Shown piece after piece: positions 5,895-41,785 of a stretch of 64,000 nucleotides of DNA (positions are counted from its first letter, which is position 1; every line of letters begins with the position of its first letter). The stretch spans positions 124,001-188,000 of IMG/VR virus record IMGVR_UViG_3300049048_000052, one strand, 5' to 3'. Position numbers and translations under genes: made by a program. Under the pieces are notes generated by a model. That model ran no database searches, was not told the origin of the DNA, and was given only the letters and a program-made list of their open reading frames with translations.

Positions 5895-5953
5895 CTGGTT
5901 CTATAAAATAGAACTGGTTGAGGGGGAGTGGTGTAATGGTAGCCACGCAGGTC

Positions 5954-6499
5954 TTAACTCATTGGAGTTAGTTGGTGTATTAGTTTATAAGCGTTCTTAA
6001 CTAGATCTCTAGAGAGCATCTTACCACCAGATATCAATTTTATAATTGGGTTCTTGCGTGAGTGGTCTAACTGAAATCTAGCTTGAGGATATAAGTCCAG
6101 GAAGGATGTGGCAGTATCTTTATTAGAGGCAGCTATTTCTATCCTATAAGTCTTAACTTTATAGACTTGTACTAAAAGTTGCTTTATCAGATCTATTAAA
6201 GTAGGATCCTGGTTGCAGAAGTAAACATGATTTGTTTTATCTGTATGCCAGCCCTCACATAAATAGGCCGTATGGGCAGCAATGGAAAGAGGTGTTAGGA
6301 GTAAATCATCTGTAGGGGAGATATAGTTCTTCCTAGCTAGAAAGTTATACTCTGAGGCAGATCTCATTGGTATATGGTACTTCCTTAAGTAAGACCTAAT
6401 AGTCTTATGGTTACAGGCTAGTAACTGACCTATCTGATAGGGATTAAGTTCCTGAGTCAGGTATAGATCCTCAAGTACCTCTTTATTAATTAACTTCAT
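5954..6499 (-). CDS. intron-encoded HTH + LAGLIDADG-like endonuclease, antisense to the intron
   Basis: N-terminal HTH (LEDLYL...QIGQLLACNHKTIRSYLRKYHI); AYLCEGW...VYFCNQDPTLI LAGLIDADG-like block. Confidence 0.7.
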   Translation of the reverse strand: MKLINKEVLEDLYLTQELNPYQIGQLLACNHKTIRSYLRKYHIPMRSASEYNFLARKNYISPTDDLLLTPLSIAAHTAYLCEGWHTDKTNHVYFCNQDPTLIDLIKQLLVQVYKVKTYRIEIAASNKDTATSFLDLYPQARFQLDHSRKNPIIKLISGGKMLSRDLVKNAYKLIHQLTPMS

Positions 6500-6753
6500 A
6501 ATCCTGAGCCTTCATGTAGAAATACATGTTGTGAACGAAGCTATATGCGGGAAACGCTTAAAGCCTACAACACTATATGTCTACCAAGATATAAGTAACA
6601 GTTTGTAGGATGTAACAATAGCCAATCCGCAGGGAAGATACCTAGGTATCCCCTCAGAGACTAAACGCTTTGCACCTTAACGTAGAGACGAAGGTGATGA
6701 TATAGTCCAGACTACAACAGCTTACGCTGGCCTATGAAAGTAGGAGTAGTAAG
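5956..6753 (+). mobile_element. group I intron in tRNA-Leu anticodon (after U34)
   Basis: Exon ends in U, intron ends in G; core elements ATATGCGGGAAA (P), AATCCGCAGG (Q), TCAGAGACTAAA (R), GATGATATAGTCC (S); IGS-like GAGCCT at 6506-6511. Confidence 0.9.
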
Positions 6754-6908
6754 AGGAACCTGTGCCGCAAGGCGTGAGAGTTCGAATCTCTCCTCCCCCA
6801 TTTACAGTAGTGAGCACACGGTATGATGTAGGGTTCCCCCTACTTGTACTAAGGCTAATACCTTTGCTATATTCACTACTGTAAACATATTGATTGTTTC
6901 TAATAATT

Positions 6909-7325
6909 ATGGAAACACAAATGGCATTATTTGGTTTTGGTGGTTCTAACTCTGCTATCGATGAGTTAAGCCGTGTCTTAGGTGCAAGTAGCTCTATTGC
7001 TAGCCAACAGAGTCCCCCGTATGAAATTGGGATCTCTGATCGTAAACTAGTAGTTAAGTTCATAGTACCTGGTATCGATAAGGATACTGTTGATGTGACC
7101 ATCCATGATAAGTACGTAGAGCTATATGGCATGCGTAAGAAGGATGATAAGTTAGCAGTTGAACTGAGTGAGTTCTATTACGGTAAGGTTTATCGTACAG
7201 CCCCACTAAGTCAGAGAGTAGACAGAAACTCTGCCTCTGTATCTTACTCAGATGGTATTCTGACTCTCTCTATGGATCTATTACCAGTTAATCCTCCCAC
7301 TGCGGTTAGGGTTAAATTAGGTTAA
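6909..7325 (+). CDS. hsp20: small heat shock protein Hsp20
   Basis: VPGIDKDTVDVTI, EFYYGKVYRT, ASVSYSDGILTL alpha-crystallin motifs; start moved to ATG 6909. Confidence 0.9.
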   Translation: METQMALFGFGGSNSAIDELSRVLGASSSIASQQSPPYEIGISDRKLVVKFIVPGIDKDTVDVTIHDKYVELYGMRKKDDKLAVELSEFYYGKVYRTAPLSQRVDRNSASVSYSDGILTLSMDLLPVNPPTAVRVKLG

Positions 7326-7347
7326 ACATTATAGGAGTTATTGATCT

Positions 7348-7860
7348 ATGCAGTTAAACATTATGAGTGGTTCTACGGGGGATCCACCTTGGAGAACAGA
7401 TGATGTGGGTAGGCGTATCCCAGACCGAACTGGGACAACTAAGGGTGGTTATATACCGGACTATCCTGGTATCGGTTTCCCTAAGCCTCCTAATACTTTC
7501 TATCACCTAATTAACTCAACCTATAAGGCACCTGCTGATATACCATGTGATGCTAATAGTGTTGGCACTCAGTTCATCGCTGTGTTCAACTTGGGTGGTG
7601 TAAGGAAGGAGGATATTGATATCACTGTCCATCCTGACAGAGTAGAGATATCTGCTACTAGAAGTCTCAGCGGCCCTAAGTCGTTGAGTCTTTATAGTAG
7701 TGAAGTCTCCTGCGGTAAGCTAAGGCGCACCATCCCATTTGAGGATACTAAGGTCAACATCGAGACAGCTAAGGCTGACTATGATAATGGACTGGTAACT
7801 CTCACAATGGACCTGCTTCAACCTAAGCCGCCACCGGCCGTCAAGGTAGAAATCAAATAA
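7348..7860 (+). CDS. hsp20: small heat shock protein Hsp20 (second copy)
   Basis: LGGVRKEDIDITV, GKLRRTIPF, AKADYDNGLVTL. Confidence 0.9.
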   Translation: MQLNIMSGSTGDPPWRTDDVGRRIPDRTGTTKGGYIPDYPGIGFPKPPNTFYHLINSTYKAPADIPCDANSVGTQFIAVFNLGGVRKEDIDITVHPDRVEISATRSLSGPKSLSLYSSEVSCGKLRRTIPFEDTKVNIETAKADYDNGLVTLTMDLLQPKPPPAVKVEIK

Positions 7861-7924
7861 GAAGGATACCTTCCTTACTGTATAACTGCTATAGTTATCA
7901 TTAGTAAGGAAGGTATTAACTTAT

Positions 7925-8272
7925 ATGGAAATGGATATATTTAGCCCCTCAAGACTCGTCTGTATTCACTATGGAAATAATGCTATAGATGAGATAATGG
8001 ATGGTAGAGCTGAGGAAGCCCTAGATAAACTAGAGAAGGCTCGTGAGGATGATATGTTCGATATGGAGCATTATCAATCTATACTGCTCTATGTGGGTGC
8101 ATGCCTTAAACAAGAGAGCATGGGCCATTATATACAATTCCTATTGACTATCTTTGATGAAGATGATATTACTAGTATTAACACCGCAGATTCTAAGGTC
8201 AATGGTGTCCTAGCGGAAGCGGCAGCAATCCATAGCGGGGATGGAGCAACGGGAGGCTCGATGGTCTCATAA
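7925..8272 (+). CDS. hypothetical protein (3' end overlaps tRNA)
   Basis: ORF with AAGGAAGG SD; stop codon falls in the anticodon loop of the tRNA at 8234. Confidence 0.55.
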   Translation: MEMDIFSPSRLVCIHYGNNAIDEIMDGRAEEALDKLEKAREDDMFDMEHYQSILLYVGACLKQESMGHYIQFLLTIFDEDDITSINTADSKVNGVLAEAAAIHSGDGATGGSMVS

Positions 8273-8308
8273 GCCATACATCGCTGAGTTCAATTCTCAG
8301 CCCCGACA
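8234..8308 (+). tRNA. tRNA-Met(CAU), initiator-like body, irregular acceptor stem
   Basis: D stem GAGC/GCTC; anticodon arm ATGGT-CTCATAA-GCCAT; T arm CTGAG-TTCAATT-CTCAG; only CGGGG/CCCCG of the acceptor pairs. Confidence 0.7.
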
Positions 8309-8310
8309 TT

Positions 8311-8535
8311 GTCAGTTTACCTGTCCTGACGTTGTGAAAAGATAGGTGTAGGTCATAGGCCTAACTAGCAAGAATTGAGTTCGAATCTCAACAGGTCCAT
8401 TTCGAGGGCCTGACTTGGTAATCGATTGTTAGCATGAGGAACTATGACTGAAGGTGTGTACAACCAAAGTACAGAACAACAAGTGCAACCAATAACATTG
8501 TACCCTTCTCAAGGGTAAGTTCTATAGTAGTGTAA
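8311..8535 (+). ncRNA. ssrA: tmRNA, circularly permuted (two-piece): acceptor piece about 8311-8399, coding piece from 8406; tag ORF 8485-8535 ATNNIVPFSRVSSIVV*
   Basis: T arm TTGAG-TTCGAAT-CTCAA and CAGGTCC-A lie upstream of the 5' strand GGGCCTG (G3:U70); P2 helices GTCATAG/CTATGAC and CTAGCAA/TTGTTAG; pseudoknots at 8311-8347 and about 8453-8473; cyanobacterial-type NNIVPF tag. Confidence 0.9.
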
Positions 8536-8540
8536 TCTAC

Positions 8541-9305
8541 TCAGGCGTTTAGTATACTAAACGCCTGCTCTTTTTTACGCATACAGTAGGGACCACCTAA
8601 GTTATATAACCTAAATATAAAAGTCTTAAGGATTTTACCTTGAAAGGAGAAACCGTACTGATTATTCCAGTTGGGATTCTTACTTTGCAAGTCCCTCATA
8701 TGTACATTAAGGGATATATCTAGTAGTTTGTTGAGCCTAGAGGCTAGAGTATACATAAAAGACTTTGAGCATCCATAGGCTGTAAGTCTACGGGAGGACC
8801 AACACCCGTCAGAGTCTAGATATCCTCTAATGAAATCTAACTCGTAGACGCTGTCTATAAGAGGCTCAGGGTAAATCATAGTCTTGGACTTATTACTTTC
8901 TAACTTTAGGATAGTAGTTAGATCTCTATGTAGACTAGTGGAACATATAGCGAGCTGAAGACAGTTAGAAGCTATATTCCTTATTTTATAATCGGTATTG
9001 AGGTTAGATTGTATCTGTTCTAGAATATCCCTGTCCGAGGTAGTAAATACTATCTGACATCCATTTCTATGTAAGTGACCATCCCCATACAATACACCTA
9101 ACATCCAAGCTTTAAAGGTGTCCATAGGGAACAATTTATAGTTCTTAAGCTTAGATAATGGCTTATAGGACATTGCCCCGGAGCTCTGCAGGACTTTGTA
9201 TATACAATAAGAGGATAGCCCTAATTTAGAACTAATATTTGTAACAGACTGACCCTCCTTATACATAGTTATAATAGGCGTTGGGTTAATATGAGTAGAT
9301 TTCAT
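8541..9305 (-). CDS. double-motif LAGLIDADG homing endonuclease with N-terminal HTH
   Basis: AWMLGVLYGDGHL and DFIRGYLDSDGCW motifs. Confidence 0.9.
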   Translation of the reverse strand: MKSTHINPTPIITMYKEGQSVTNISSKLGLSSYCIYKVLQSSGAMSYKPLSKLKNYKLFPMDTFKAWMLGVLYGDGHLHRNGCQIVFTTSDRDILEQIQSNLNTDYKIRNIASNCLQLAICSTSLHRDLTTILKLESNKSKTMIYPEPLIDSVYELDFIRGYLDSDGCWSSRRLTAYGCSKSFMYTLASRLNKLLDISLNVHMRDLQSKNPNWNNQYGFSFQGKILKTFIFRLYNLGGPYCMRKKEQAFSILNA

Positions 9306-9369
9306 AAAATTTGTATTGACTACATGCTTATATTACTAAAGTAATATAGGAAAGAGTGGGTTAATGTTC

Positions 9370-9405
9370 GTACCCTTTGCACGCACCCGCGTAGCAGTAG
9401 GTTAA
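9370..9405 (+). other. displaced 3' half of the tmRNA tag reading frame (VPFARTRVAVG*)
   Basis: GTACCCTT direct repeat with 8500-8507; translates as a cyanobacterial-style tag C-terminus. Confidence 0.75.
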
Positions 9406-9409
9406 TTTA

Positions 9410-9436
9410 GAGAGGGCTCCTTGGGGGGGCCCTTTC
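9410..9436 (+). terminator. GC-rich stem-loop terminator
   Basis: GAGAGGGCTCC-TTGGG-GGGGCCCTTTC. Confidence 0.6.
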
Positions 9437-9451
9437 ACATTAGGAGGGTGT

Positions 9452-9706
9452 ATGGACTCTGATCTCTTAGAGAAGTGGATACTACAATTCTTGGCAGAGC
9501 ACAAAGGGAATCCTAGACTAGTAACCCAAATACTACACGGTGTAAGGATGGATAGTCTAGGTGCGGACTACATTCAAGTAGGTAAGGCTTTACGTACTTT
9601 AAAGGTAAAGGGTCTTATCAAAGTACATAAGATGTATCTAGGTCAGCATTCAAAGAGGTGGCGGCCCTGCTATGAGTTAGAGGAGGTATTCTTAAATGAA
9701 TATTGA
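9452..9706 (+). CDS. hypothetical protein, possible winged-helix
   Basis: GGAGG SD; ILQFL...VGKALRTLKVKGLI pattern. Confidence 0.55.
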   Translation: MDSDLLEKWILQFLAEHKGNPRLVTQILHGVRMDSLGADYIQVGKALRTLKVKGLIKVHKMYLGQHSKRWRPCYELEEVFLNEY

Positions 9707-9911
9707 TACATGTTCCTATGTATTAAATATTGTTGATAGAATATGTCACAGGATACTGTTATACTTATTGGCAACAGCTATAATACATCTATTACTAGAG
9801 CGCTTGGGTATAGGCGCATGGTTAATAGAGGCCGCAGTATTGGCTACCTATAGTATAATAGCTGTGCTTGATATAAACCTTTGTATCCGTATCCAAAAGA
9901 AAGATGAATAA
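9696..9911 (+). CDS. small membrane protein
   Basis: two hydrophobic segments; overlaps neighbours. Confidence 0.5.
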   Translation: MNIDTCSYVLNIVDRICHRILLYLLATAIIHLLLERLGIGAWLIEAAVLATYSIIAVLDINLCIRIQKKDE

Positions 9912-10122
9912 TCTAGATGAGATCGAGCAGGTGTTGGCTTACTTTGGGTTCGTAGAGAAGCTATTCGTAGGAGTACTACTCTCCTTGTTAGCTGTTATCT
10001 TAATTAGATCCTGTACTATACCGTGGTTAGATGTAACCATAGCTATATTAGGAGGGCTGGTTATACCAGTTGCTACCTTATGGTATATAGACAGTTGTAG
10101 TAGTAAATGGAGAGACTGGTAA
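9904..10122 (+). CDS. small membrane protein
   Basis: two hydrophobic segments. Confidence 0.5.
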   Translation: MNNLDEIEQVLAYFGFVEKLFVGVLLSLLAVILIRSCTIPWLDVTIAILGGLVIPVATLWYIDSCSSKWRDW

Positions 10123-10128
10123 ATACCT

Positions 10129-10200
10129 GCCACCTAGGCCAAATGGTGCGGCGGTGAGTTCATACCTCACTTATAGTAAGTTCGATTCTTACAGGTGGTA
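10129..10200 (+). tRNA. tRNA with CAU anticodon (Met or Ile2)
   Basis: Acceptor GCCACCT/AGGTGGT+A; anticodon arm GTGAG-TTCATAC-CTCAC; T arm GTAAG-TTCGATT-CTTAC. Confidence 0.85.
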
Positions 10201-10220
10201 TTGTCGAGTTAAAGGAATAT

Positions 10221-10640
10221 ATGAGTCTTAGTCAGCAAGTAAAAGATTTCTTAAGTGTGGCCCCAGCTAGCTGGATTCCTCCAAGGAAACTTATCACTAC
10301 TAAGTTGAGAGAGCCTATCAAGGGATGTCCTCAACTGAATGTTTACCCCCTGAACCAAGTACTAGAAATTAGCATGGATGGGGCACCCTTCTATCAACCC
10401 AATACTATATGTAGACTAACGGATTCAGATTTCCAGTTCACTATGGTCTACGTTCCAGGAAGGGGTCCCATAGAAGTCTATGTGATTAAAGATCAGAGTA
10501 CTGCCTATGTGTTTGAGGATCAGGTAGAGGCCTTTGCATTCCTCTACACTATTAAGCCCTACGAGCTAACTCAACTGGACGGAGATCCAACCTATGAGTG
10601 GGCACAGTTCAGATCTCACCTAGCCCCAGTACCCGCTTGA
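10221..10640 (+). CDS. hypothetical protein
   Basis: 139-aa ORF with AAGGA SD. Confidence 0.65.
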   Translation: MSLSQQVKDFLSVAPASWIPPRKLITTKLREPIKGCPQLNVYPLNQVLEISMDGAPFYQPNTICRLTDSDFQFTMVYVPGRGPIEVYVIKDQSTAYVFEDQVEAFAFLYTIKPYELTQLDGDPTYEWAQFRSHLAPVPA

Positions 10641-10991: not shown

Positions 10992-11061
10992 TTCCCAGTC
11001 GCATAACTTGCGTTCCCAACTGGGATTCTTAGCAATGGTTGGCTTAGTCCAATCATTTCTT

Positions 11062-11134
11062 GAGGCTGTCGTCTAAAATGGTAGGACTCCCCAAGTTAGT
11101 GGGGCAGATGTAGGTTCAAATCCTACCGGCTTCA
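11062..11134 (+). tRNA. tRNA-like RNA with 6-nt anticodon loop (undetermined isotype)
   Basis: Acceptor GAGGCTG/CGGCTTC+A (G3:U70); D stem GTCT/GGAC; CCCCA-AGTTAG-TGGGG; T arm GTAGG-TTCAAAT-CCTAC. Confidence 0.7.
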
Positions 11135-11139
11135 TTTAT

Positions 11140-38024: not shown

Positions 38025-38747
38025 ATGACTAAGAGAAGACTGGCCTTGAAGGAGAAAGAAGTTGTGAATAACGCCCCTATCTCCTTTCCTATAAAGACAG
38101 ACACACTAATCAAGCCTGCTAATTATAATCAGAGGGAGTTAGTCAGAAGCATAAAGCAGAATGATATAACCCTAGCCTATGGTCCTGCAGGTACGGGGAA
38201 GACATTGGTCTCCCTATTTACCGCAGTACAGATGCTAAATAACTCTGATAGTCCTATAGAAAAGATCATTTATATAAGAGCTAATGTGGATTCTAGGGAG
38301 GAGAAAGAACTAGGCGCATTACCTGGTGGTTTCATAGATAAGGTTAAGCCCCTTGCCTATCCAATCCTAGATAACCTTATCCACTTCATGCCTAACAATC
38401 AGGCTACCTACTTAATAGAGAGTGGTAGGATTGAGATTAGTCCCCTAATGATGATCAGAGGCAGATCCTTAGCCAATACTTTTATTCTTGCTGATGAGGT
38501 GCAAAACATTAGCCCTAAAGCTATGAAGACATTACTTACTCGTATATCCTATGGGAGCCGTATGGTCCTAGTGGGAGACCCTGAGCAGGTGGATGTAACT
38601 CATAGAGGAAGGGATGGACTCTCTGATGCGGTCAGTAGACTAGGATCTATTAGGGAGGGCGTGGGTATGATTAGGTTTACAAAGGCTGATATTGTACGTC
38701 ATGGTCTAACAGGAGAAATACTCGATGCCTACGAGGGAGTGTACTAA
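38025..38747 (+). CDS. phoH: PhoH-family protein
   Basis: GPAGTGKT, LGALPG, RGRSL, ILADEVQN, LLTRI, GDPEQVD, DIVRH. Confidence 0.95.
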   Translation: MTKRRLALKEKEVVNNAPISFPIKTDTLIKPANYNQRELVRSIKQNDITLAYGPAGTGKTLVSLFTAVQMLNNSDSPIEKIIYIRANVDSREEKELGALPGGFIDKVKPLAYPILDNLIHFMPNNQATYLIESGRIEISPLMMIRGRSLANTFILADEVQNISPKAMKTLLTRISYGSRMVLVGDPEQVDVTHRGRDGLSDAVSRLGSIREGVGMIRFTKADIVRHGLTGEILDAYEGVY

Positions 38748-39225
38748 TCCCCACTATAGCCATAAATATGGGGTATCTAAAGGCAGGTACCCCATAAAAC
38801 AGATTCGTGATCTGGTAAGACAATATGGTTCATCTTCGGATCCTACTAGGATAGATTTAGATGGAGATCTGGTCTGTGTTACTAGTGAGAGACTTAGAAC
38901 TTTCGCTTCTAAGGGGGTTCAATGTGTCCGTTGTGGTATTACAGGAGATCATTATATTAAAGAGAAGAGTCATATAAGCGATCTCTTCTTTCATCTCAAT
39001 CTGTATAGCACACATAGAAATGGTAACTTCATACTCATGACTAAGGATCATATAATCCCTAAGAGTGCAGGAGGTAGTAATAGCTTGTCTAACCTTCAAC
39101 CTATGTGTGCGCCTTGTAATAGAAAGAAAGGAGATAGCTATGGGCATGGCAGTGAGGGCAAAGACGAGAAAGAAGGTCATTCCTGCTCCGATGAGACTTC
39201 AGGTCTTCCTAAAGGAGTCCATTGA
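38725..39225 (+). CDS. HNH endonuclease
   Basis: CVRCG...MTKDHIIPKSAGGSN.LSNLQPMCAPCN..KG. Confidence 0.85.
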   Translation: MPTRECTNPHYSHKYGVSKGRYPIKQIRDLVRQYGSSSDPTRIDLDGDLVCVTSERLRTFASKGVQCVRCGITGDHYIKEKSHISDLFFHLNLYSTHRNGNFILMTKDHIIPKSAGGSNSLSNLQPMCAPCNRKKGDSYGHGSEGKDEKEGHSCSDETSGLPKGVH

Positions 39226-39670
39226 ATTACCTAAGTCTGTGGCCTCTGTGTCTATTAAGCAGGTAATGTACTGGAAGGGACAGGGTTTAGACTCTATTCT
39301 TCTTCATGGCTTAAATGTAAGACTTGATACTCAAACATTAACCACCTTCAGGAATTCAGGTGTTCACTGTATGATATGTGGTATAAAGGGGATCGTATTC
39401 AATCTCTATCACTTCCTTGATAACAGAGGACGTGAGACTGGGGATGGCTATCTTGTCCTTCATGCTCCTAATCCTAGATATGGGGGTTTCCCTAATCTTA
39501 AGATGGGCACAGATCATATAGTACCCAGATGTATGGGTGGTTCTGATCATATCGATAATCTGCAGACGTGTTGCTGTCAATGTAATGGTACTAAGGGAGG
39601 TGATCTGGATGGGGCTATTAAGGCCCTAATTAAGATGAGACTAGAGAGGAAGGAGCTCCTCAGAGGTTAG
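39140..39670 (+). CDS. HNH endonuclease (paralog)
   Basis: CMICG...DHIVPRCMGGSD.IDNLQTCCCQCN.TKG; GGAG SD before ATG 39140. Confidence 0.85.
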   Translation: MGMAVRAKTRKKVIPAPMRLQVFLKESIELPKSVASVSIKQVMYWKGQGLDSILLHGLNVRLDTQTLTTFRNSGVHCMICGIKGIVFNLYHFLDNRGRETGDGYLVLHAPNPRYGGFPNLKMGTDHIVPRCMGGSDHIDNLQTCCCQCNGTKGGDLDGAIKALIKMRLERKELLRG

Positions 39671-39716: not shown

Positions 39717-41257
39717 ATGAAATTAGAAGTACTAGATAAAGGTTTTATAGAGGTGGTCGATACCTTAGGTAGCGATCTAACCGTTGTTAATAGCGCTAGG
39801 GTATCCTTTGGACATCGTAAGGAGTCCCTTGATAAATCAGATATTAAGTTAATTGGATATTTAAAGAAGCACAAGCACTATTCTCCATTTCGCCATATGA
39901 TGGTGCAGCTGCATATCAAGATGCCTGAGGTGGTGGCAAGACAACTGTTAACAGAAATGGTGACCAGTAAATACAACTCCCTTGTATTAATCTAGTAATA
40001 GATTATGCAAAGGATAAATCAATGATTCTAGAGACTAAGGGCGATAAGGTACTACGTAGATGCGATACCTGTGGTAATGAGAAGTGGGTTGAGAAATGGA
40101 AGTACTATAAACTAGAGGAGCACACCTGTAGAGATTGTTACTGCCGATTAAAAGCAGCAGCACGTAAAGGTAAACCTTCTAGATACAAAGGTATTATTAG
40201 GCAACCCAATCCTAAGAGAGGGAGTACTTATATTAATTCCTCAGGTTACGTCGAGGAGTATATAGGTGCTGTAGATAATAATAGGAAAGGCAAGTATTAT
40301 CTCCAACACAGATTAATAGTTGAGAAGTACCTAGGTAGAGTCCTTGATAAATCAGAACTAGTTCACCATATTAATGGTGACAAAACTGATAATCGACTTG
40401 AGAACCTATACCTATGTCAATCTATGTCTCACCACAAGACTCTACACCAACAATTAGAGCAAGTATCTATGCAATTGGTTAAACTAAATCTTATAGAATT
40501 TGATAATGAAGCTGGTAGCTATAGAATAGCAGCCCATATCAGTAATGATATGGTGAATAATCCTGTGAATTCAGGGGAACCCCTAACGTATAATGACGAG
40601 GGCAATCCTGATCCAAGCTTTGAAGAGTAGTCTTCATTGAAGGAGCAACGACTATCCGTAAGGAGTAGGGCTCAAGGGAGCTCGAAGCGCAGGACATCCT
40701 AATAGGATGATGATATAGTCTGAGCTTTAGGGAGACCTAAAGAGAGTGTATGGAGCCGATATACTCGTAACATAACTGATAAACATGTCGTAGGTATTGA
40801 GACCTCCTCTTCCTCTGTATGTAAGGATCATGCATGGAATGAGATTAGTAGACGTTATGTAGAGATAGATGATTACTATGTGCCAGACATCTGGCGCCTG
40901 CAGTCTCCTTCTAATAAGCAAGCATCTCAGTTAGATGAACACGGTAATCCTATAGTTAACGAGGCTATACAAGAGTGGGCCTGTAAGGAATACGCAGACT
41001 TTATAGCTTCCCTAGATCTTAAGGTTAAAGCATTTATAGCTAAGGGTATTGCTAAAGAGCAGGCACAGATCATGCTGCCTATCTCTTTCTATACTGAGAT
41101 CTATTGGACCGCATCATTCCAGGCCATCATGAACTTCATTGAGCTTAGGAATGACAACCATGCCCAATGGGAGATTAGGCAGTATGCCCTTGCACTCCTC
41201 CGAATAATGGAGCAATTATTCCCAGTCTGCACTAATGCATGGTTAGAGAATAGCTGA
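39717..41257 (+). CDS. thyX: flavin-dependent thymidylate synthase, split by group I intron (exons 39717-39948, 40779-41257)
   Basis: NSARVS, HYSPF; spliced junction restores VARQLYKHVVG...WNEISRRY; HAQWEIR. Confidence 0.95.
39949..40778 (+). mobile_element. group I intron in thyX
   Basis: U|...G| boundaries; AATTCAGGGGAA (P), AATCCTGATCCAAG (Q), GCAACGACTA (R), GATGATATAGTCT (S); IGS GCAG at 40529-40532. Confidence 0.9.
40022..40630 (+). CDS. intron-encoded HNH homing endonuclease
   Basis: CxxC pairs; QHRLIVEKYLGR.L...E.VHHINGDKTDNRLENL. Confidence 0.9.
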   Translation: MILETKGDKVLRRCDTCGNEKWVEKWKYYKLEEHTCRDCYCRLKAAARKGKPSRYKGIIRQPNPKRGSTYINSSGYVEEYIGAVDNNRKGKYYLQHRLIVEKYLGRVLDKSELVHHINGDKTDNRLENLYLCQSMSHHKTLHQQLEQVSMQLVKLNLIEFDNEAGSYRIAAHISNDMVNNPVNSGEPLTYNDEGNPDPSFEE

Positions 41258-41290: not shown

Positions 41291-41785
41291 ATGGAAGATT
41301 CAATAGAAAGCTGTTTACAGGATACTGATGTTATAGCTGTTTATAGGCAGTACATAGAGGTATCAGATCCAGAGAAGTGGACCATAATGCCTCTTAAGGA
41401 ATGGGTAGAGAATGTAGATAAGGGAGACCGTAGAGGTTACTCACTAAAAGAGTCTGTACTATCCTGCATCAGAACTGCTATATGGCATAGGACTACTTCC
41501 TGGGAGGACCAAATGAAGCTAGCCAAGCCTATGGATACTGAGAAGATGCGCTCAATGGGAATGAATACCCAGAAAGCATATCAGTTCTTCAATGAAGATC
41601 CTATAGAGGCTTCTATAGACGATTGCACCCTAGAGGATAGTCTCAAGGCTAGGAAGCTAGAGATCTATATCAAGGAATTAGATATTGATAAGTTAAGAGA
41701 GTTCATATTGGGCTTCTATAAGCAGACGCTTATGAAGGAGGCCCTATATAAAAAGATGTTAAAGGTAAATATAAGTGGAAGCTAA
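41291..41785 (+). CDS. nblA: protein with C-terminal NblA (phycobilisome degradation)-like domain
   Basis: TLE.....R...........D....F....YKQ....EA.Y...LK aligns ungapped to the NblA pattern. Confidence 0.65.
   Translation: MEDSIESCLQDTDVIAVYRQYIEVSDPEKWTIMPLKEWVENVDKGDRRGYSLKESVLSCIRTAIWHRTTSWEDQMKLAKPMDTEKMRSMGMNTQKAYQFFNEDPIEASIDDCTLEDSLKARKLEIYIKELDIDKLREFILGFYKQTLMKEALYKKMLKVNISGS

What the first reader, a model, noticed from the sequence alone, without database searches (positions are those of the whole stretch)
8485..9436. Homing endonuclease inserted in the tmRNA tag ORF, supplying a replacement tag C-terminus
GTACCCTT occurs at 8500-8507 and 9370-9377, flanking the antisense LAGLIDADG gene. 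Read through the left copy the tag is ATNNIVPFSRVSSIVV*; joined at the right copy it is ATNNIVPFARTRVAVG*. The two have identical length; the second is closer to cyanobacterial tags and is followed by a terminator. Inference: an intron-less HEG invaded the mRNA-like domain and rebuilt a recoded (cleavage-immune) tag end, which is tolerated because the permuted gene ends after the tag. Alternatively, removal of the 870-nt insert (DNA recombination or RNA ligation) switches between two tags.
Basis: partly seen in the sequence, partly recalled or inferred. Interest (0 to 1): 0.85.

Follow-up and report, generated by a model that had tools for sequence, protein, structure and literature searches.

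The report
Homing endonuclease splits phage tmRNA tag
A selfish endonuclease gene has landed inside the tiny protein-tagging message of a cyanophage's ribosome-rescue RNA (tmRNA), bringing a substitute ending for the tag and leaving the original ending stranded 870 bases downstream; this layout is known from fungal mitochondrial genes but, as far as I could find, not from a tmRNA.

Summary
A circularly permuted, cyanobacterial-type tmRNA gene starts at 8310. Its tag ORF (8485-8535) reads ATNNIVPFSRVSSIVV*. An intact 254-aa double-motif LAGLIDADG endonuclease gene lies antisense at 8541-9305. GTACCCTT occurs at 8500-8507 and 9370-9377. Reading from the second copy gives VPFARTRVAVG* and a stable hairpin.

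The 8-mer repeat alone is at chance level. The downstream fragment is not: ARTRVAVG is the single best match, among 73,681 six-frame octamers in the window, to cyanobacterial tag tails.

There is no intron core, transposase or integrase in the insert. The best reading is a free-standing HEG cassette carrying its own tag tail and terminator. It replaced the native tail and displaced it as an orphan. This is tolerated because a permuted tmRNA gene ends just after the tag.

The new tail is itself tag-like: it keeps the family's F-S-R, ends in I-V-V and has the same minimal architecture. It was therefore probably imported from another phage tmRNA rather than rebuilt.

Not shown: cleavage immunity, tag switching and the HEG-less ancestor. 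No relative of this phage exists in any collection searched.

I class it as a new variant of the mitochondrial "mobile ORF with portable gene end" kind.

The parts
8310..8507 (+). Undisturbed 5' part of the permuted tmRNA gene. It holds the 3' half of the tRNA-like domain (8364-8399, T-arm plus acceptor 3' strand), the spacer, the 5' half (8406-8433, GGGCCUG acceptor with G3.U70), the long helix that joins the two halves, a hairpin just upstream of the resume codon (where PK1 would be expected), the resume codon GCA at 8485, and tag codons 1-8 (ATNNIVPF).
   Evidence: ARAGORN. Rfam tmRNA_permuted scores 45.0 bits (cut-off 47, E 2.7e-7) and cyano_tmRNA scores 43.1 bits (cut-off 70, E 4.8e-10).
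8500..8507 (+). Left copy of GTACCCTT (codons V-P-F of the tag). This is the last sequence shared with the orphan.
8508..8535 (+). Cassette-borne replacement tag tail, (F)SRVSSIVV plus the TAA stop at 8533-8535.
   Evidence: ARAGORN tag. F-S-R matches permuted cyanobacterial and cyanophage tags. The tail ranks 19 of 4254 among stop-terminated octamers. A random continuation gives an 8-residue tail with an aliphatic end in 0.09% of cases.
8501..8517 (.). Perfect 7-bp inverted repeat, TACCCTT-CTC-AAGGGTA, straddling the left junction. Its role is unknown; it may be the terminator of the HEG transcript.
   Evidence: -7.5 kcal/mol, z -2.7.
8542..8576 (+). Intrinsic terminator of the present tmRNA gene: an 11-bp hairpin at 8542-8567 and a run of six U at 8571-8576. 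It lies inside the 3' coding end of the antisense HEG.
   Evidence: -16.7 kcal/mol, z -5.6.
8541..9305 (-). Intact single-chain LAGLIDADG homing endonuclease gene (254 aa) with an N-terminal helix-turn-helix. Motifs are LGVLYGDG (D75) and IRGYLDSDG (D166). The C-terminal helix is encoded across the terminator hairpin.
   Evidence: Pfam LAGLIDADG_3. phrog_4645 at 1e-24. Family alignment invariants. AlphaFold pLDDT 92.8. Foldseek hits to I-Tsp061I, PI-PfuI and I-DmoI.
9306..9369 (-). A 64-nt region upstream of the HEG, with a 9-bp palindrome at 9329-9348. This is the right end of the cassette.
9370..9377 (+). Right copy of GTACCCTT, where the displaced native fragment begins.
9378..9405 (+). Orphaned native tag tail, (F)ARTRVAVG plus the TAA stop at 9403-9405.
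   Evidence: It is the only one of 73,681 octamers to match 6 of 8 residues of cyanobacterial tag tails. It ranks 10 of 4254 against an independent set of cyanophage tails. ARAGORN accepts the joined gene.
9410..9436 (+). Orphaned 3' hairpin of the ancestral tmRNA gene, GAGAGGGCUCCU/GGGGGGCCCUUUC. It now lies just upstream of the ribosome-binding site of ORF 9452-9706.
   Evidence: -21 kcal/mol, z -3.6. It has the same position relative to the stop codon as the new hairpin.

Best explanation
The window comes from a 252-kb cyanophage. The phage carries a two-piece (circularly permuted) cyanobacterial-type tmRNA gene that originally read ATNNIVPFARTRVAVG* and ended in the hairpin at 9410-9436.

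A free-standing LAGLIDADG homing endonuclease cassette entered the tag-coding stretch at the V-P-F codons. The cassette spans 8508-9369, with the exact boundary ambiguous within the 8-nt repeat. It consists of a 28-nt substitute tag tail (SRVSSIVV*), an intrinsic terminator that overlaps the antisense HEG's 3' end, the HEG itself, and 64 nt upstream of the HEG.

The tmRNA is now transcribed and terminated within the cassette, so it encodes ATNNIVPFSRVSSIVV. The native tail and hairpin are stranded 870 nt downstream as an unexpressed orphan.

The most likely route is inferred, not shown. The HEG sat just 3' of a related phage's tmRNA gene and cut the HEG-less allele in the tag region during co-infection. 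Repair then copied the donor's tail, terminator and HEG. One repair end resolved by homology in the tmRNA body. The other resolved illegitimately or by microhomology at GTACCCTT, which duplicated that 8-mer.

The insertion is tolerated because the tRNA-like domain halves, the helix that joins them and the resume codon all lie upstream of it, and the gene needs only a stop codon and a 3' hairpin afterwards. Insertion destroys the target site, so the carrier is immune.

Shown: the anatomy, the authenticity of both tails, the intactness of the HEG and the absence of an intron. Inferred: the donor origin, the cut site, immunity and expression.
For: - The tmRNA call and both tags are confirmed.
- The HEG is intact. 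Both catalytic motifs are present and the family-conserved C-terminal R243-K244 is kept. The model is confident and has a monomeric LAGLIDADG fold.
- The orphan octamer is uniquely tag-like in the window: 1 of 73,681 against cyanobacterial tails and 10 of 4254 against an independent cyanophage set.
- The new tail is also tag-like. It keeps the F-S-R found in the Rfam cyano_tmRNA consensus (ANNIVSFSR) and in 34 distinct cyanophage tails. It ranks 19 of 4254.
- Only 0.09% of random continuations give an 8-residue tail with three aliphatic end residues.
- The new and old modules match at 19 of 43 nt in register through the stop and spacer, with an empirical p of 0.0077.
- Both modules have only 7-8 nt between the stop and the hairpin, whereas other cyano-type permuted tmRNAs have 45-60 nt.
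- No group I or II hit appears in 8100-9700 at E<=10.
- The insert has no other ORF with transposase or integrase character.
- The genome is HEG-rich: three HNH ORFs, two group I introns, and an antisense ORF inside a tRNA-Leu intron.
- A precedent for this architecture exists. Mitochondrial mORFs carry a foreign gene C-terminus, with the native C*-terminus left downstream (PMC3630166).
Against: - No HEG-less relative, and no relative of any kind, was found. The ancestral state is therefore inferred from one genome.
- The 8-nt repeat alone is at chance level.
- DNA similarity between the new and old tails is weak: 9 of 25 nt over the tail alone (p about 0.1-0.2), and a gapped alignment of the whole modules is not significant.
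- Most of the new tail's score against the cyanophage set comes from just S-R.
- Both Rfam tmRNA scores fall below the gathering thresholds.
- The orphan ends in Gly, which is unusual for a proteolysis tag.
- LAGLIDADG enzymes leave 4-nt overhangs, so the 8-nt duplication is not a simple cut-site signature.
- Neither expression of the tmRNA nor activity of the HEG has been shown.
Confidence: 0.7

Rival explanations
1. The insertion is the same, but the new tail is not imported. The HEG entered by illegitimate recombination at the GTACCCTT microhomology. The current tail (SRVSSIVV*) and terminator are whatever lay beyond the HEG's stop codon, kept or polished by selection because they still give a usable tag and 3' end.
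For: Tail-only DNA identity to the old tail is not significant (9 of 25). The gapped alignment of the whole modules is not significant. The terminator hairpin is part of the HEG's own coding 3' end. Most of the new tail's tag-likeness rests on two residues.
Against: Equal tail length together with an aliphatic end occurs in 0.09% of random continuations. F-S-R is the family motif. The in-register match of 19 of 43 nt includes the post-stop spacer (p 0.0077). Both modules share the same unusual minimal architecture.
Confidence: 0.17
2. The fragment at 9370-9436 is the remnant of a second tmRNA copy or of a partial tandem duplication of the gene's 3' end. The HEG is simply a free-standing gene that landed between the intact gene (native tail SRVSSIVV) and that remnant.
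For: Both tails are tag-like. HEGs sit next to tmRNA and tRNA clusters in other cyanophages, for example an HNH ORF about 660 nt downstream of the tmRNA in L548.
Against: This needs two events (a duplication and an insertion) exactly abutting each other. The remnant starts with an 8/8 match and then drops to about 44% identity, which looks like a recombination junction rather than a decayed paralogue. The HEG's conserved C-terminus overlaps the 'native' terminator, and only 5 nt separate the two stop codons.
Confidence: 0.07
3. The 870 nt are removed to give the joined tag, so that two tags alternate. Removal would occur either at RNA level (an unrecognised intron or ligation) or at DNA level (deletion between the 8-nt repeats).
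For: The joined form is a perfect tmRNA by ARAGORN with an in-frame 16-residue tag. The same genome has a tRNA-Leu group I intron with an antisense ORF.
Against: No ribozyme family hit appears at E<=10. Only 64 nt lie beyond the HEG, too few for a group I core. None of the possible junctions within the repeat ends the insert in G, so none fits the group I rule of -1 U and terminal G. A strong terminator follows the first stop codon. The second assembly fetched is 100% identical to the window over 19.3 kb and carries the insert.
Confidence: 0.03
4. Coincidence: the tmRNA gene is intact and native, the HEG merely lies downstream of it, and 9370-9405 is unrelated sequence.
For: The 8-mer repeat is at chance level.
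Against: The orphan octamer is the single best tag-tail match among 73,681 octamers. It lies directly in frame after V-P-F codons and is followed at once by a stop and a hairpin.
Confidence: 0.03

Closest known systems
Mobile endonuclease ORFs (mORFs) with a portable gene C-terminus in fungal mitochondria: Allomyces macrogynus atp6; Glomus sp. atp6, atp9, cox2, nad3 (PMC3630166 and the work it cites)
   Same: An intron-less LAGLIDADG (or GIY-YIG) gene sits inside a host gene. An in-frame substitute 3' end travels with it. The native 3' end is left intact but displaced downstream and is not expressed. The substitute is a diverged homologue of the native end.
   Different: Here the host gene is an RNA gene whose only ORF is a 16-codon tag. 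The HEG is antisense and not fused in frame. The substitute is only 28 nt plus a terminator. The carrier is a phage. The foreign origin of the substitute could not be shown against a HEG-less relative.
Group I introns, some with LAGLIDADG HEGs, in the T-psi-C loop of tmRNA genes (Williams laboratory tmRNA database, PMC11915505)
   Same: A LAGLIDADG HEG is associated with a tmRNA gene.
   Different: Those HEGs ride in self-splicing introns, at four subsites of the T-loop only. Here there is no ribozyme, the site is the tag ORF, and the RNA is not restored by splicing.
Free-standing phage HEGs that split or abut genes, such as mobE in nrdA of Aeromonas phage Aeh1 and the T4 seg/mob genes (from my own knowledge, not checked here)
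   Same: An intron-less HEG sits inside a phage gene, with function kept and spread by double-strand-break repair with co-conversion of flanks.
   Different: Those cases yield two protein pieces or lie between genes. None supplies a substitute gene end or leaves an orphan, and they are GIY-YIG or HNH enzymes rather than LAGLIDADG.
Genomic islands and prophages integrated in the 3' end of ssrA that carry a replacement 3' end
   Same: A mobile element is inserted in a tmRNA gene, brings a substitute 3' portion and displaces the native one.
   Different: Those use an integrase and att sites in the tRNA-like 3' end of one-piece genes. Here there is no integrase, the element is 0.86 kb, and the site is the tag ORF of a permuted gene.
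Phage-encoded two-piece tmRNAs, such as methylophage Melnitz, pelagiphages and cyanophages (PMC9004378; IMG/VR loci)
   Same: A permuted tmRNA in an aquatic phage, with a tag of the ANNIV.F[S/A]R family.
   Different: None of the loci examined has an insertion in the tag. The others carry 45-60 nt more after the stop codon.

Membership tests
Two-piece (circularly permuted) tmRNA, cyanobacterial type | tRNA-like domain with a 7-bp acceptor stem including G3.U70 and a T-arm, with its 3' half encoded upstream of its 5' half | tested here: met
   ARAGORN 'Permuted' call: 3' domain at 8364-8399, 5' domain at 8406-8433, gggcctg/caggtcc pairing with G3.U.
Two-piece (circularly permuted) tmRNA, cyanobacterial type | Score at or above the Rfam gathering threshold | tested here: not met
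   RF04321 scores 45.0 against 47. RF01851 scores 43.1 against 70. E-values are 2.7e-7 and 4.8e-10. The shortfall lies largely in the missing post-tag region.
Two-piece (circularly permuted) tmRNA, cyanobacterial type | Tag ORF starting at an Ala resume codon with the lineage's ANNIV.F[S/A]R core | tested here: met
   A-T-NNIVPF-SR in the current tag and -AR in the orphan. Compared with 22 cyanobacterial and 34 cyanophage tails.
Two-piece (circularly permuted) tmRNA, cyanobacterial type | Structured 45-60 nt segment between the stop codon and the terminal hairpin | tested here: not met
   Only 7-8 nt in both the current and the orphan module.
Two-piece (circularly permuted) tmRNA, cyanobacterial type | Alanylation, SmpB binding and trans-translation | not testable with these tools
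   Needs experiments.
LAGLIDADG homing endonuclease (single-chain) | Two LAGLIDADG motifs, each with its acidic residue | tested here: met
   LGVLYGDG (D75) and IRGYLDSDG (D166). D166 and G167 are invariant and D75 and G76 nearly invariant among 41 family members.
LAGLIDADG homing endonuclease (single-chain) | Family profile match above the curated cut-off | tested here: met
   Pfam PF14528 at 34.3 bits against 22.5. phrog_4645 at 1e-24.
LAGLIDADG homing endonuclease (single-chain) | Pseudo-dimeric alpha-beta-beta-alpha-beta-beta-alpha fold | tested here: met
   pLDDT 92.8. Foldseek probability 1.00 to I-Tsp061I, PI-PfuI and I-DmoI.
LAGLIDADG homing endonuclease (single-chain) | Site-specific cleavage of the HEG-less allele, and presence/absence polymorphism among relatives | tested here: inconclusive
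   No relatives were found in any collection. Cleavage is not testable here.
mORF-type gene hybrid (HEG with a portable gene end) | Intron-less endonuclease ORF inside the host gene, with an in-frame substitute 3' end | tested here: met
mORF-type gene hybrid (HEG with a portable gene end) | Native 3' end retained downstream of the endonuclease ORF | tested here: met
   Orphan tail plus hairpin at 9370-9436.
mORF-type gene hybrid (HEG with a portable gene end) | The substitute end is a diverged homologue of foreign origin, and the native end matches HEG-less relatives | tested here: inconclusive
   19 of 43 nt in register (p 0.0077), but the tail-only and gapped tests are not significant. No HEG-less relative is available.
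Group I intron in a tmRNA gene | Ribozyme core, a -1 U and a terminal G, and a site in the T-psi-C loop | tested here: not met
   No Intron_gpI hit in 8100-9700 at E<=10, although the model finds two introns elsewhere in the window. The boundaries and the site do not fit (PMC11915505).
Integrase-borne island or transposon in ssrA | An integrase or transposase gene, and att sites or terminal inverted repeats | tested here: not met
   The only ORF of 40 aa or more in the insert is the HEG; a 35-aa ORF at 8671-8778 (+) lies within it. No terminal inverted repeats were found.

The most novel reading that the evidence does not exclude
HEG cassettes can carry 'portable tag ends' for tmRNA. By swapping the last eight tag residues (from ...ARTRVAVG to ...SRVSSIVV), the element would change which host proteases, if any, recognise proteins tagged during infection. 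A selfish element would thereby reprogramme phage-directed protein quality control. A stronger version holds that the orphan is kept so that loss of the cassette, by deletion between the 8-nt repeats, switches the tag back.
Probability: 0.12. Interest if true: 0.75.

Novelty: new variant of a known kind. Interest (0 to 1): 0.58.

Why it matters
The largest curated survey of tmRNA genes (97,179 sequences, PMC11915505) reports HEGs only inside group I introns in the T-loop. Its authors say that other sites may have been missed.

This case shows a second, intron-free route by which a homing endonuclease can live in a tmRNA gene. It also shows that the 'mobile ORF plus portable gene end' strategy, known from fungal mitochondrial protein genes, operates in a phage and on an RNA gene.

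The case has practical value too. It gives a natural experiment on how much of a tag's C-terminus can be replaced. It offers a candidate new LAGLIDADG specificity with a predicted about 20-bp target. It is also a warning for annotation, because ARAGORN reports the hybrid tag with no sign of the insertion.

Tried and rejected
Searches for a HEG-less or any related tmRNA, all negative:
- blastn of 7300-10300 against 50,697 phage records found nothing.
- Four of the seven DNA-pattern scans of IMG/VR gave only the window's own contig or unrelated hits: tag start, T-arm/acceptor, the exact ATNNIVPF coding pattern and ANNIVPF. The seventh, an FSR-tail pattern, gave the cyanophage comparison set.
- One metagenome scan gave 26 hits, none of them a tmRNA.
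- Word-indexed protein searches with the HEG, the 84-aa downstream ORF and the upstream Hsp20 each returned only the query itself.
- The only other phage with the 674-aa marker protein (43% identity) has no tRNA or tmRNA within 10 kb.
- The second assembly (Logan SRR35214979) is 100% identical over 19.3 kb.

Other tests that led nowhere:
- An exhaustive HMMER search shows the HEG family is large (3246 representatives), but the nearest members are only 33-39% identical. The three nearest sit in unrelated contexts with no tmRNA nearby.
- A truncated cyano_tmRNA hit was sought on the orphan alone, and none was found.
- Pairing of either 3' module with the gene's 5' leader is not better than shuffles (p 0.09 and 0.45).
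- No upstream extension of the repeat was found.
- There are no paralogous cassettes or HEG copies elsewhere in the window.
- A 13/16 repeat at the right junction (9357-9372 against 9282-9297) is at chance level given all pairs in the region.
- Two literature searches were uninformative.
Full report
**What the window is.** The window is an exact part of IMG/VR contig IMGVR_UViG_3300049048_000052, which is 251,780 bp long. It encodes phage functions: RIIA, ribonucleotide reductase, DNA polymerase, helicase and structural proteins. It also carries an NblA-like phycobilisome-degradation protein, a cluster of about ten tRNA genes and several homing endonucleases. I read it as a jumbo cyanophage. 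It has no close relative in any collection I could search.

**Checking the observation.**
- GTACCCTT lies at 8500-8507 and 9370-9377.
- ARAGORN calls a permuted tmRNA from 8310. The 3' half of the tRNA-like domain is at 8364-8399 and the 5' half at 8406-8433. The acceptor stem has G3.U70. The tag is ATNNIVPFSRVSSIVV* at 8485-8535.
- Rfam agrees, but just below its thresholds. tmRNA_permuted scores 45.0 bits against 47 (E 2.7e-7) and cyano_tmRNA scores 43.1 against 70 (E 4.8e-10).
- The minus-strand ORF 8541-9305 (254 aa) is a LAGLIDADG endonuclease. Pfam gives 34.3 bits against a cut-off of 22.5, and phrog_4645 gives 1e-24.
- Joining 8499 to 9370 in silico gives an equally good ARAGORN tmRNA with the tag ATNNIVPFARTRVAVG*, also 16 residues.

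So every stated feature is present.

**Is it more than chance?**
The repeat alone is not.
- The window holds five copies of the 8-mer against 3.2 expected.
- Five other exact 8-9-mers repeat within the same 1.2 kb.
- The repeat does not extend upstream.

The decisive point is what follows the right copy in frame.
- I collected 22 distinct cyanobacterial tags of the ANNIVPFAR... type from a genome scan. I then scored every stop-free octamer in all six frames of the window against their tails.
- ARTRVAVG (9379-9402) matches 6 of 8 residues of ARQRVAVAAA. It is the only one of 73,681 octamers to reach 6.
- It lies directly after V-P-F codons and is followed at once by a stop and a hairpin of -21 kcal/mol.
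- I also scored it against 34 distinct tails from cyanophage-encoded permuted tmRNAs in IMG/VR, such as SRTRELATA, SRQAVAV and SRQRVPVAA. Against this independent set it ranks 10 of 4254 stop-terminated octamers.

The fragment at 9370-9436 is therefore a real tmRNA 3' end.

**The endonuclease.**
- Both motifs are intact: LGVLYGDG with D75 and IRGYLDSDG with D166. Their Asp and Gly residues are invariant or nearly invariant in an alignment of 41 family members.
- The AlphaFold model is confident (pLDDT 92.8). It shows an N-terminal helix-turn-helix and two alpha-beta-beta-alpha-beta-beta-alpha halves.
- Foldseek places it with I-Tsp061I, PI-PfuI and I-DmoI at probability 1.00.
- The C-terminal helix (242-253, with the family-conserved R243-K244) is encoded across the tmRNA terminator hairpin. 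The HEG's stop codon is 5 nt from the tag's stop. The cassette is therefore very compact.
- The family is large (3246 representatives at E<=1e-3), but the nearest members are only 33-39% identical. The three nearest sit in unrelated contexts with no tmRNA nearby. The enzyme's specificity cannot be inferred from relatives.

**What the insert is not.**
- No group I or II model hits 8100-9700 even at E<=10, although the same search finds two group I introns elsewhere in the window.
- Only 64 nt lie beyond the HEG, too few for a ribozyme core.
- None of the junctions allowed by the repeat ends the insert in G, so none gives a -1 U with a terminal G.
- A strong intrinsic terminator, with a hairpin of -16.7 kcal/mol (z -5.6) and a run of six U, follows the first stop codon.
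- There is no integrase, no transposase and no terminal inverted repeats.

RNA splicing, an island and a transposon are all rejected.

**The new tail.** It is not arbitrary sequence.
- It keeps F-S-R, the motif of the Rfam cyano_tmRNA consensus (ANNIVSFSR) and of every cyanophage tag retrieved. It ranks 19 of 4254 against those tails, although most of that score comes from S-R.
- Reading on from the Phe codon into every position of the window gives an 8-residue tail in 3.3% of cases. It gives three aliphatic end residues in 1.7% and both together in 0.09%.
- In register, the new and old modules share 19 of 43 nt from the first tail codon through the stop and spacer to the foot of the hairpin. 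The empirical p is 0.0077.
- Against this, the tail alone (9 of 25 nt) and a gapped alignment of the whole modules are not significant.
- Both modules have only 7-8 nt between the stop and the hairpin. Other cyano-type permuted tmRNAs have a 45-60 nt structured segment there.

I therefore think the tail and terminator came from the tmRNA gene of a related phage, where the HEG sat just downstream. I cannot exclude that they were shaped in place.

**Mechanism.** The steps shown are these.
- The tRNA-like domain halves, the helix that joins them and the resume codon all lie upstream of the junction.
- The present gene ends inside the cassette.
- The native end is displaced.

The steps inferred are these.
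- The HEG cut the HEG-less allele near the V-P-F codons.
- Repair copied the donor's tail, terminator and HEG.
- The left side resolved by homology. The right side resolved illegitimately or by microhomology, which duplicated GTACCCTT.
- Insertion destroys the target site and so gives immunity.

Some points remain unexplained.
- The intact orphan and the intact HEG suggest a recent event, or else the orphan hairpin is kept as a 5' element of ORF 9452-9706.
- A perfect 7-bp inverted repeat (8501-8517) straddles the left junction. It may terminate the HEG transcript.
- Pairing of either 3' module with the gene's 5' leader is no better than shuffles.

**Comparison with what is known.**
- The 2025 tmRNA database paper (PMC11915505) describes three gene forms: standard, permuted and intron-containing. 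It reports HEGs only inside group I introns at four T-loop subsites. Its authors note that introns at other sites may have been missed.
- Phage-encoded two-piece tmRNAs are known (PMC9004378).
- The architecture here matches the mobile endonuclease ORFs of fungal mitochondria, in which a foreign C-terminus replaces the native one and the native C*-terminus remains downstream. Examples are Allomyces atp6 and Glomus atp6, atp9, cox2 and nad3 (PMC3630166).
- The differences are that the host gene is an RNA gene with a 16-codon ORF, the HEG is antisense, the carrier is a phage, and the foreign origin cannot be tested against a HEG-less relative.

I class it as a new variant of a known kind.

**Limits.**
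- blastn against phage records found nothing.
- The IMG/VR pattern scans aimed at relatives found no related tmRNA.
- One metagenome scan found none.
- Three protein searches returned only the queries themselves.
- One synteny search found no tmRNA.
- The second assembly fetched is 100% identical to the window over 19.3 kb.

Expression, cleavage specificity, immunity and the behaviour of the two tags all need experiments.

**Verdict.** The main interpretation is supported in its anatomy, but 'recoding for immunity' is not shown and tag switching has no support. My confidence in the cassette-insertion model is about 0.7. Interest is 0.58: this is a clean and apparently undescribed arrangement that follows a known logic.

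Noticed in passing
window 5922-6800 (+), with the antisense ORF at 5954-6499 (-): A tRNA-Leu(UAG) gene is split at anticodon-loop position 34/35 by a group I intron of about 798 nt (Rfam core 6487-6728, 66.8 bits). The intron carries a 181-aa ORF on the opposite strand with weak similarity to the N-terminus of HNH/HTH endonucleases (phrog_7545 at 1.5e-5; HEG-family HMM at 6.6e-4). This is the same layout of an antisense ORF inside an RNA gene as at the tmRNA.
   Followed up: partly
window 39717-41257 (+): A thyX gene is split into an N-terminal part (39717-39995, Pfam Thy1 positions 2-79) and a C-terminal part (40880-41257, positions 101-191). The split is made by a group I intron (Rfam 40510-42, 91.9 bits) that carries an HNH endonuclease ORF at 40022-40630 (phrog_19902 at 1.3e-48).
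   Followed up: partly
window 38725-39225 and 39065-39670 (+): Two further HNH endonuclease ORFs overlap each other just upstream of thyX. The region is very rich in HEGs.
   Followed up: no
window 41291-41785 (+): An NblA-like ORF (Pfam NblA at 4e-5, 24.4 bits against a cut-off of 25). Together with the cyanobacterial-type tmRNA tag, it points to a cyanobacterial host.
   Followed up: no
window 8233-8309 (+): A tRNA-Met(CAT) directly abuts the start of the tmRNA call. It has a poor acceptor stem (Rfam 30.7 bits, mismatches marked) and ORF 7925-8272 overlaps it by 40 nt. It may be decaying, or it may be co-transcribed with the tmRNA.
   Followed up: no
window 9357-9372 against 9282-9297: The 16-mer at the right junction (TGGGTTAATGTTCGTA) has its only match of 13/16 or better in the whole window 75 nt away, inside the HEG's N-terminal coding region and in the same frame (TNINP against THINP). 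The 75-nt offset alignment gives 34 of 75 identities. This is about chance level given all pairs in the 1.2 kb, but the position is curious.
   Followed up: partly
window 11061-11135 (+): ARAGORN reports a tRNA of undetermined identity with a two-base 'tt' anticodon. Rfam tRNA scores it at 42.6 bits.
   Followed up: no
IMG/VR loci L471, L472, L464, L518 and others: Many cyanophage permuted tmRNAs encode long tags such as AKDIDTAANNIVAFSRVLTREFARTSELATA. These contain a second F-[A/S]-R-T motif, as if a tail had been partly duplicated or extended. Tag tails in cyanophage tmRNAs appear to evolve by insertion.
   Followed up: no
L548 7208-7500 and 8163-8798: Another cyanophage has a 25-tRNA cluster and a permuted tmRNA (tag ANNIVAFSRQTALV*). 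A free-standing HTH-HNH endonuclease ORF lies about 660 nt downstream of that tmRNA.
   Followed up: partly
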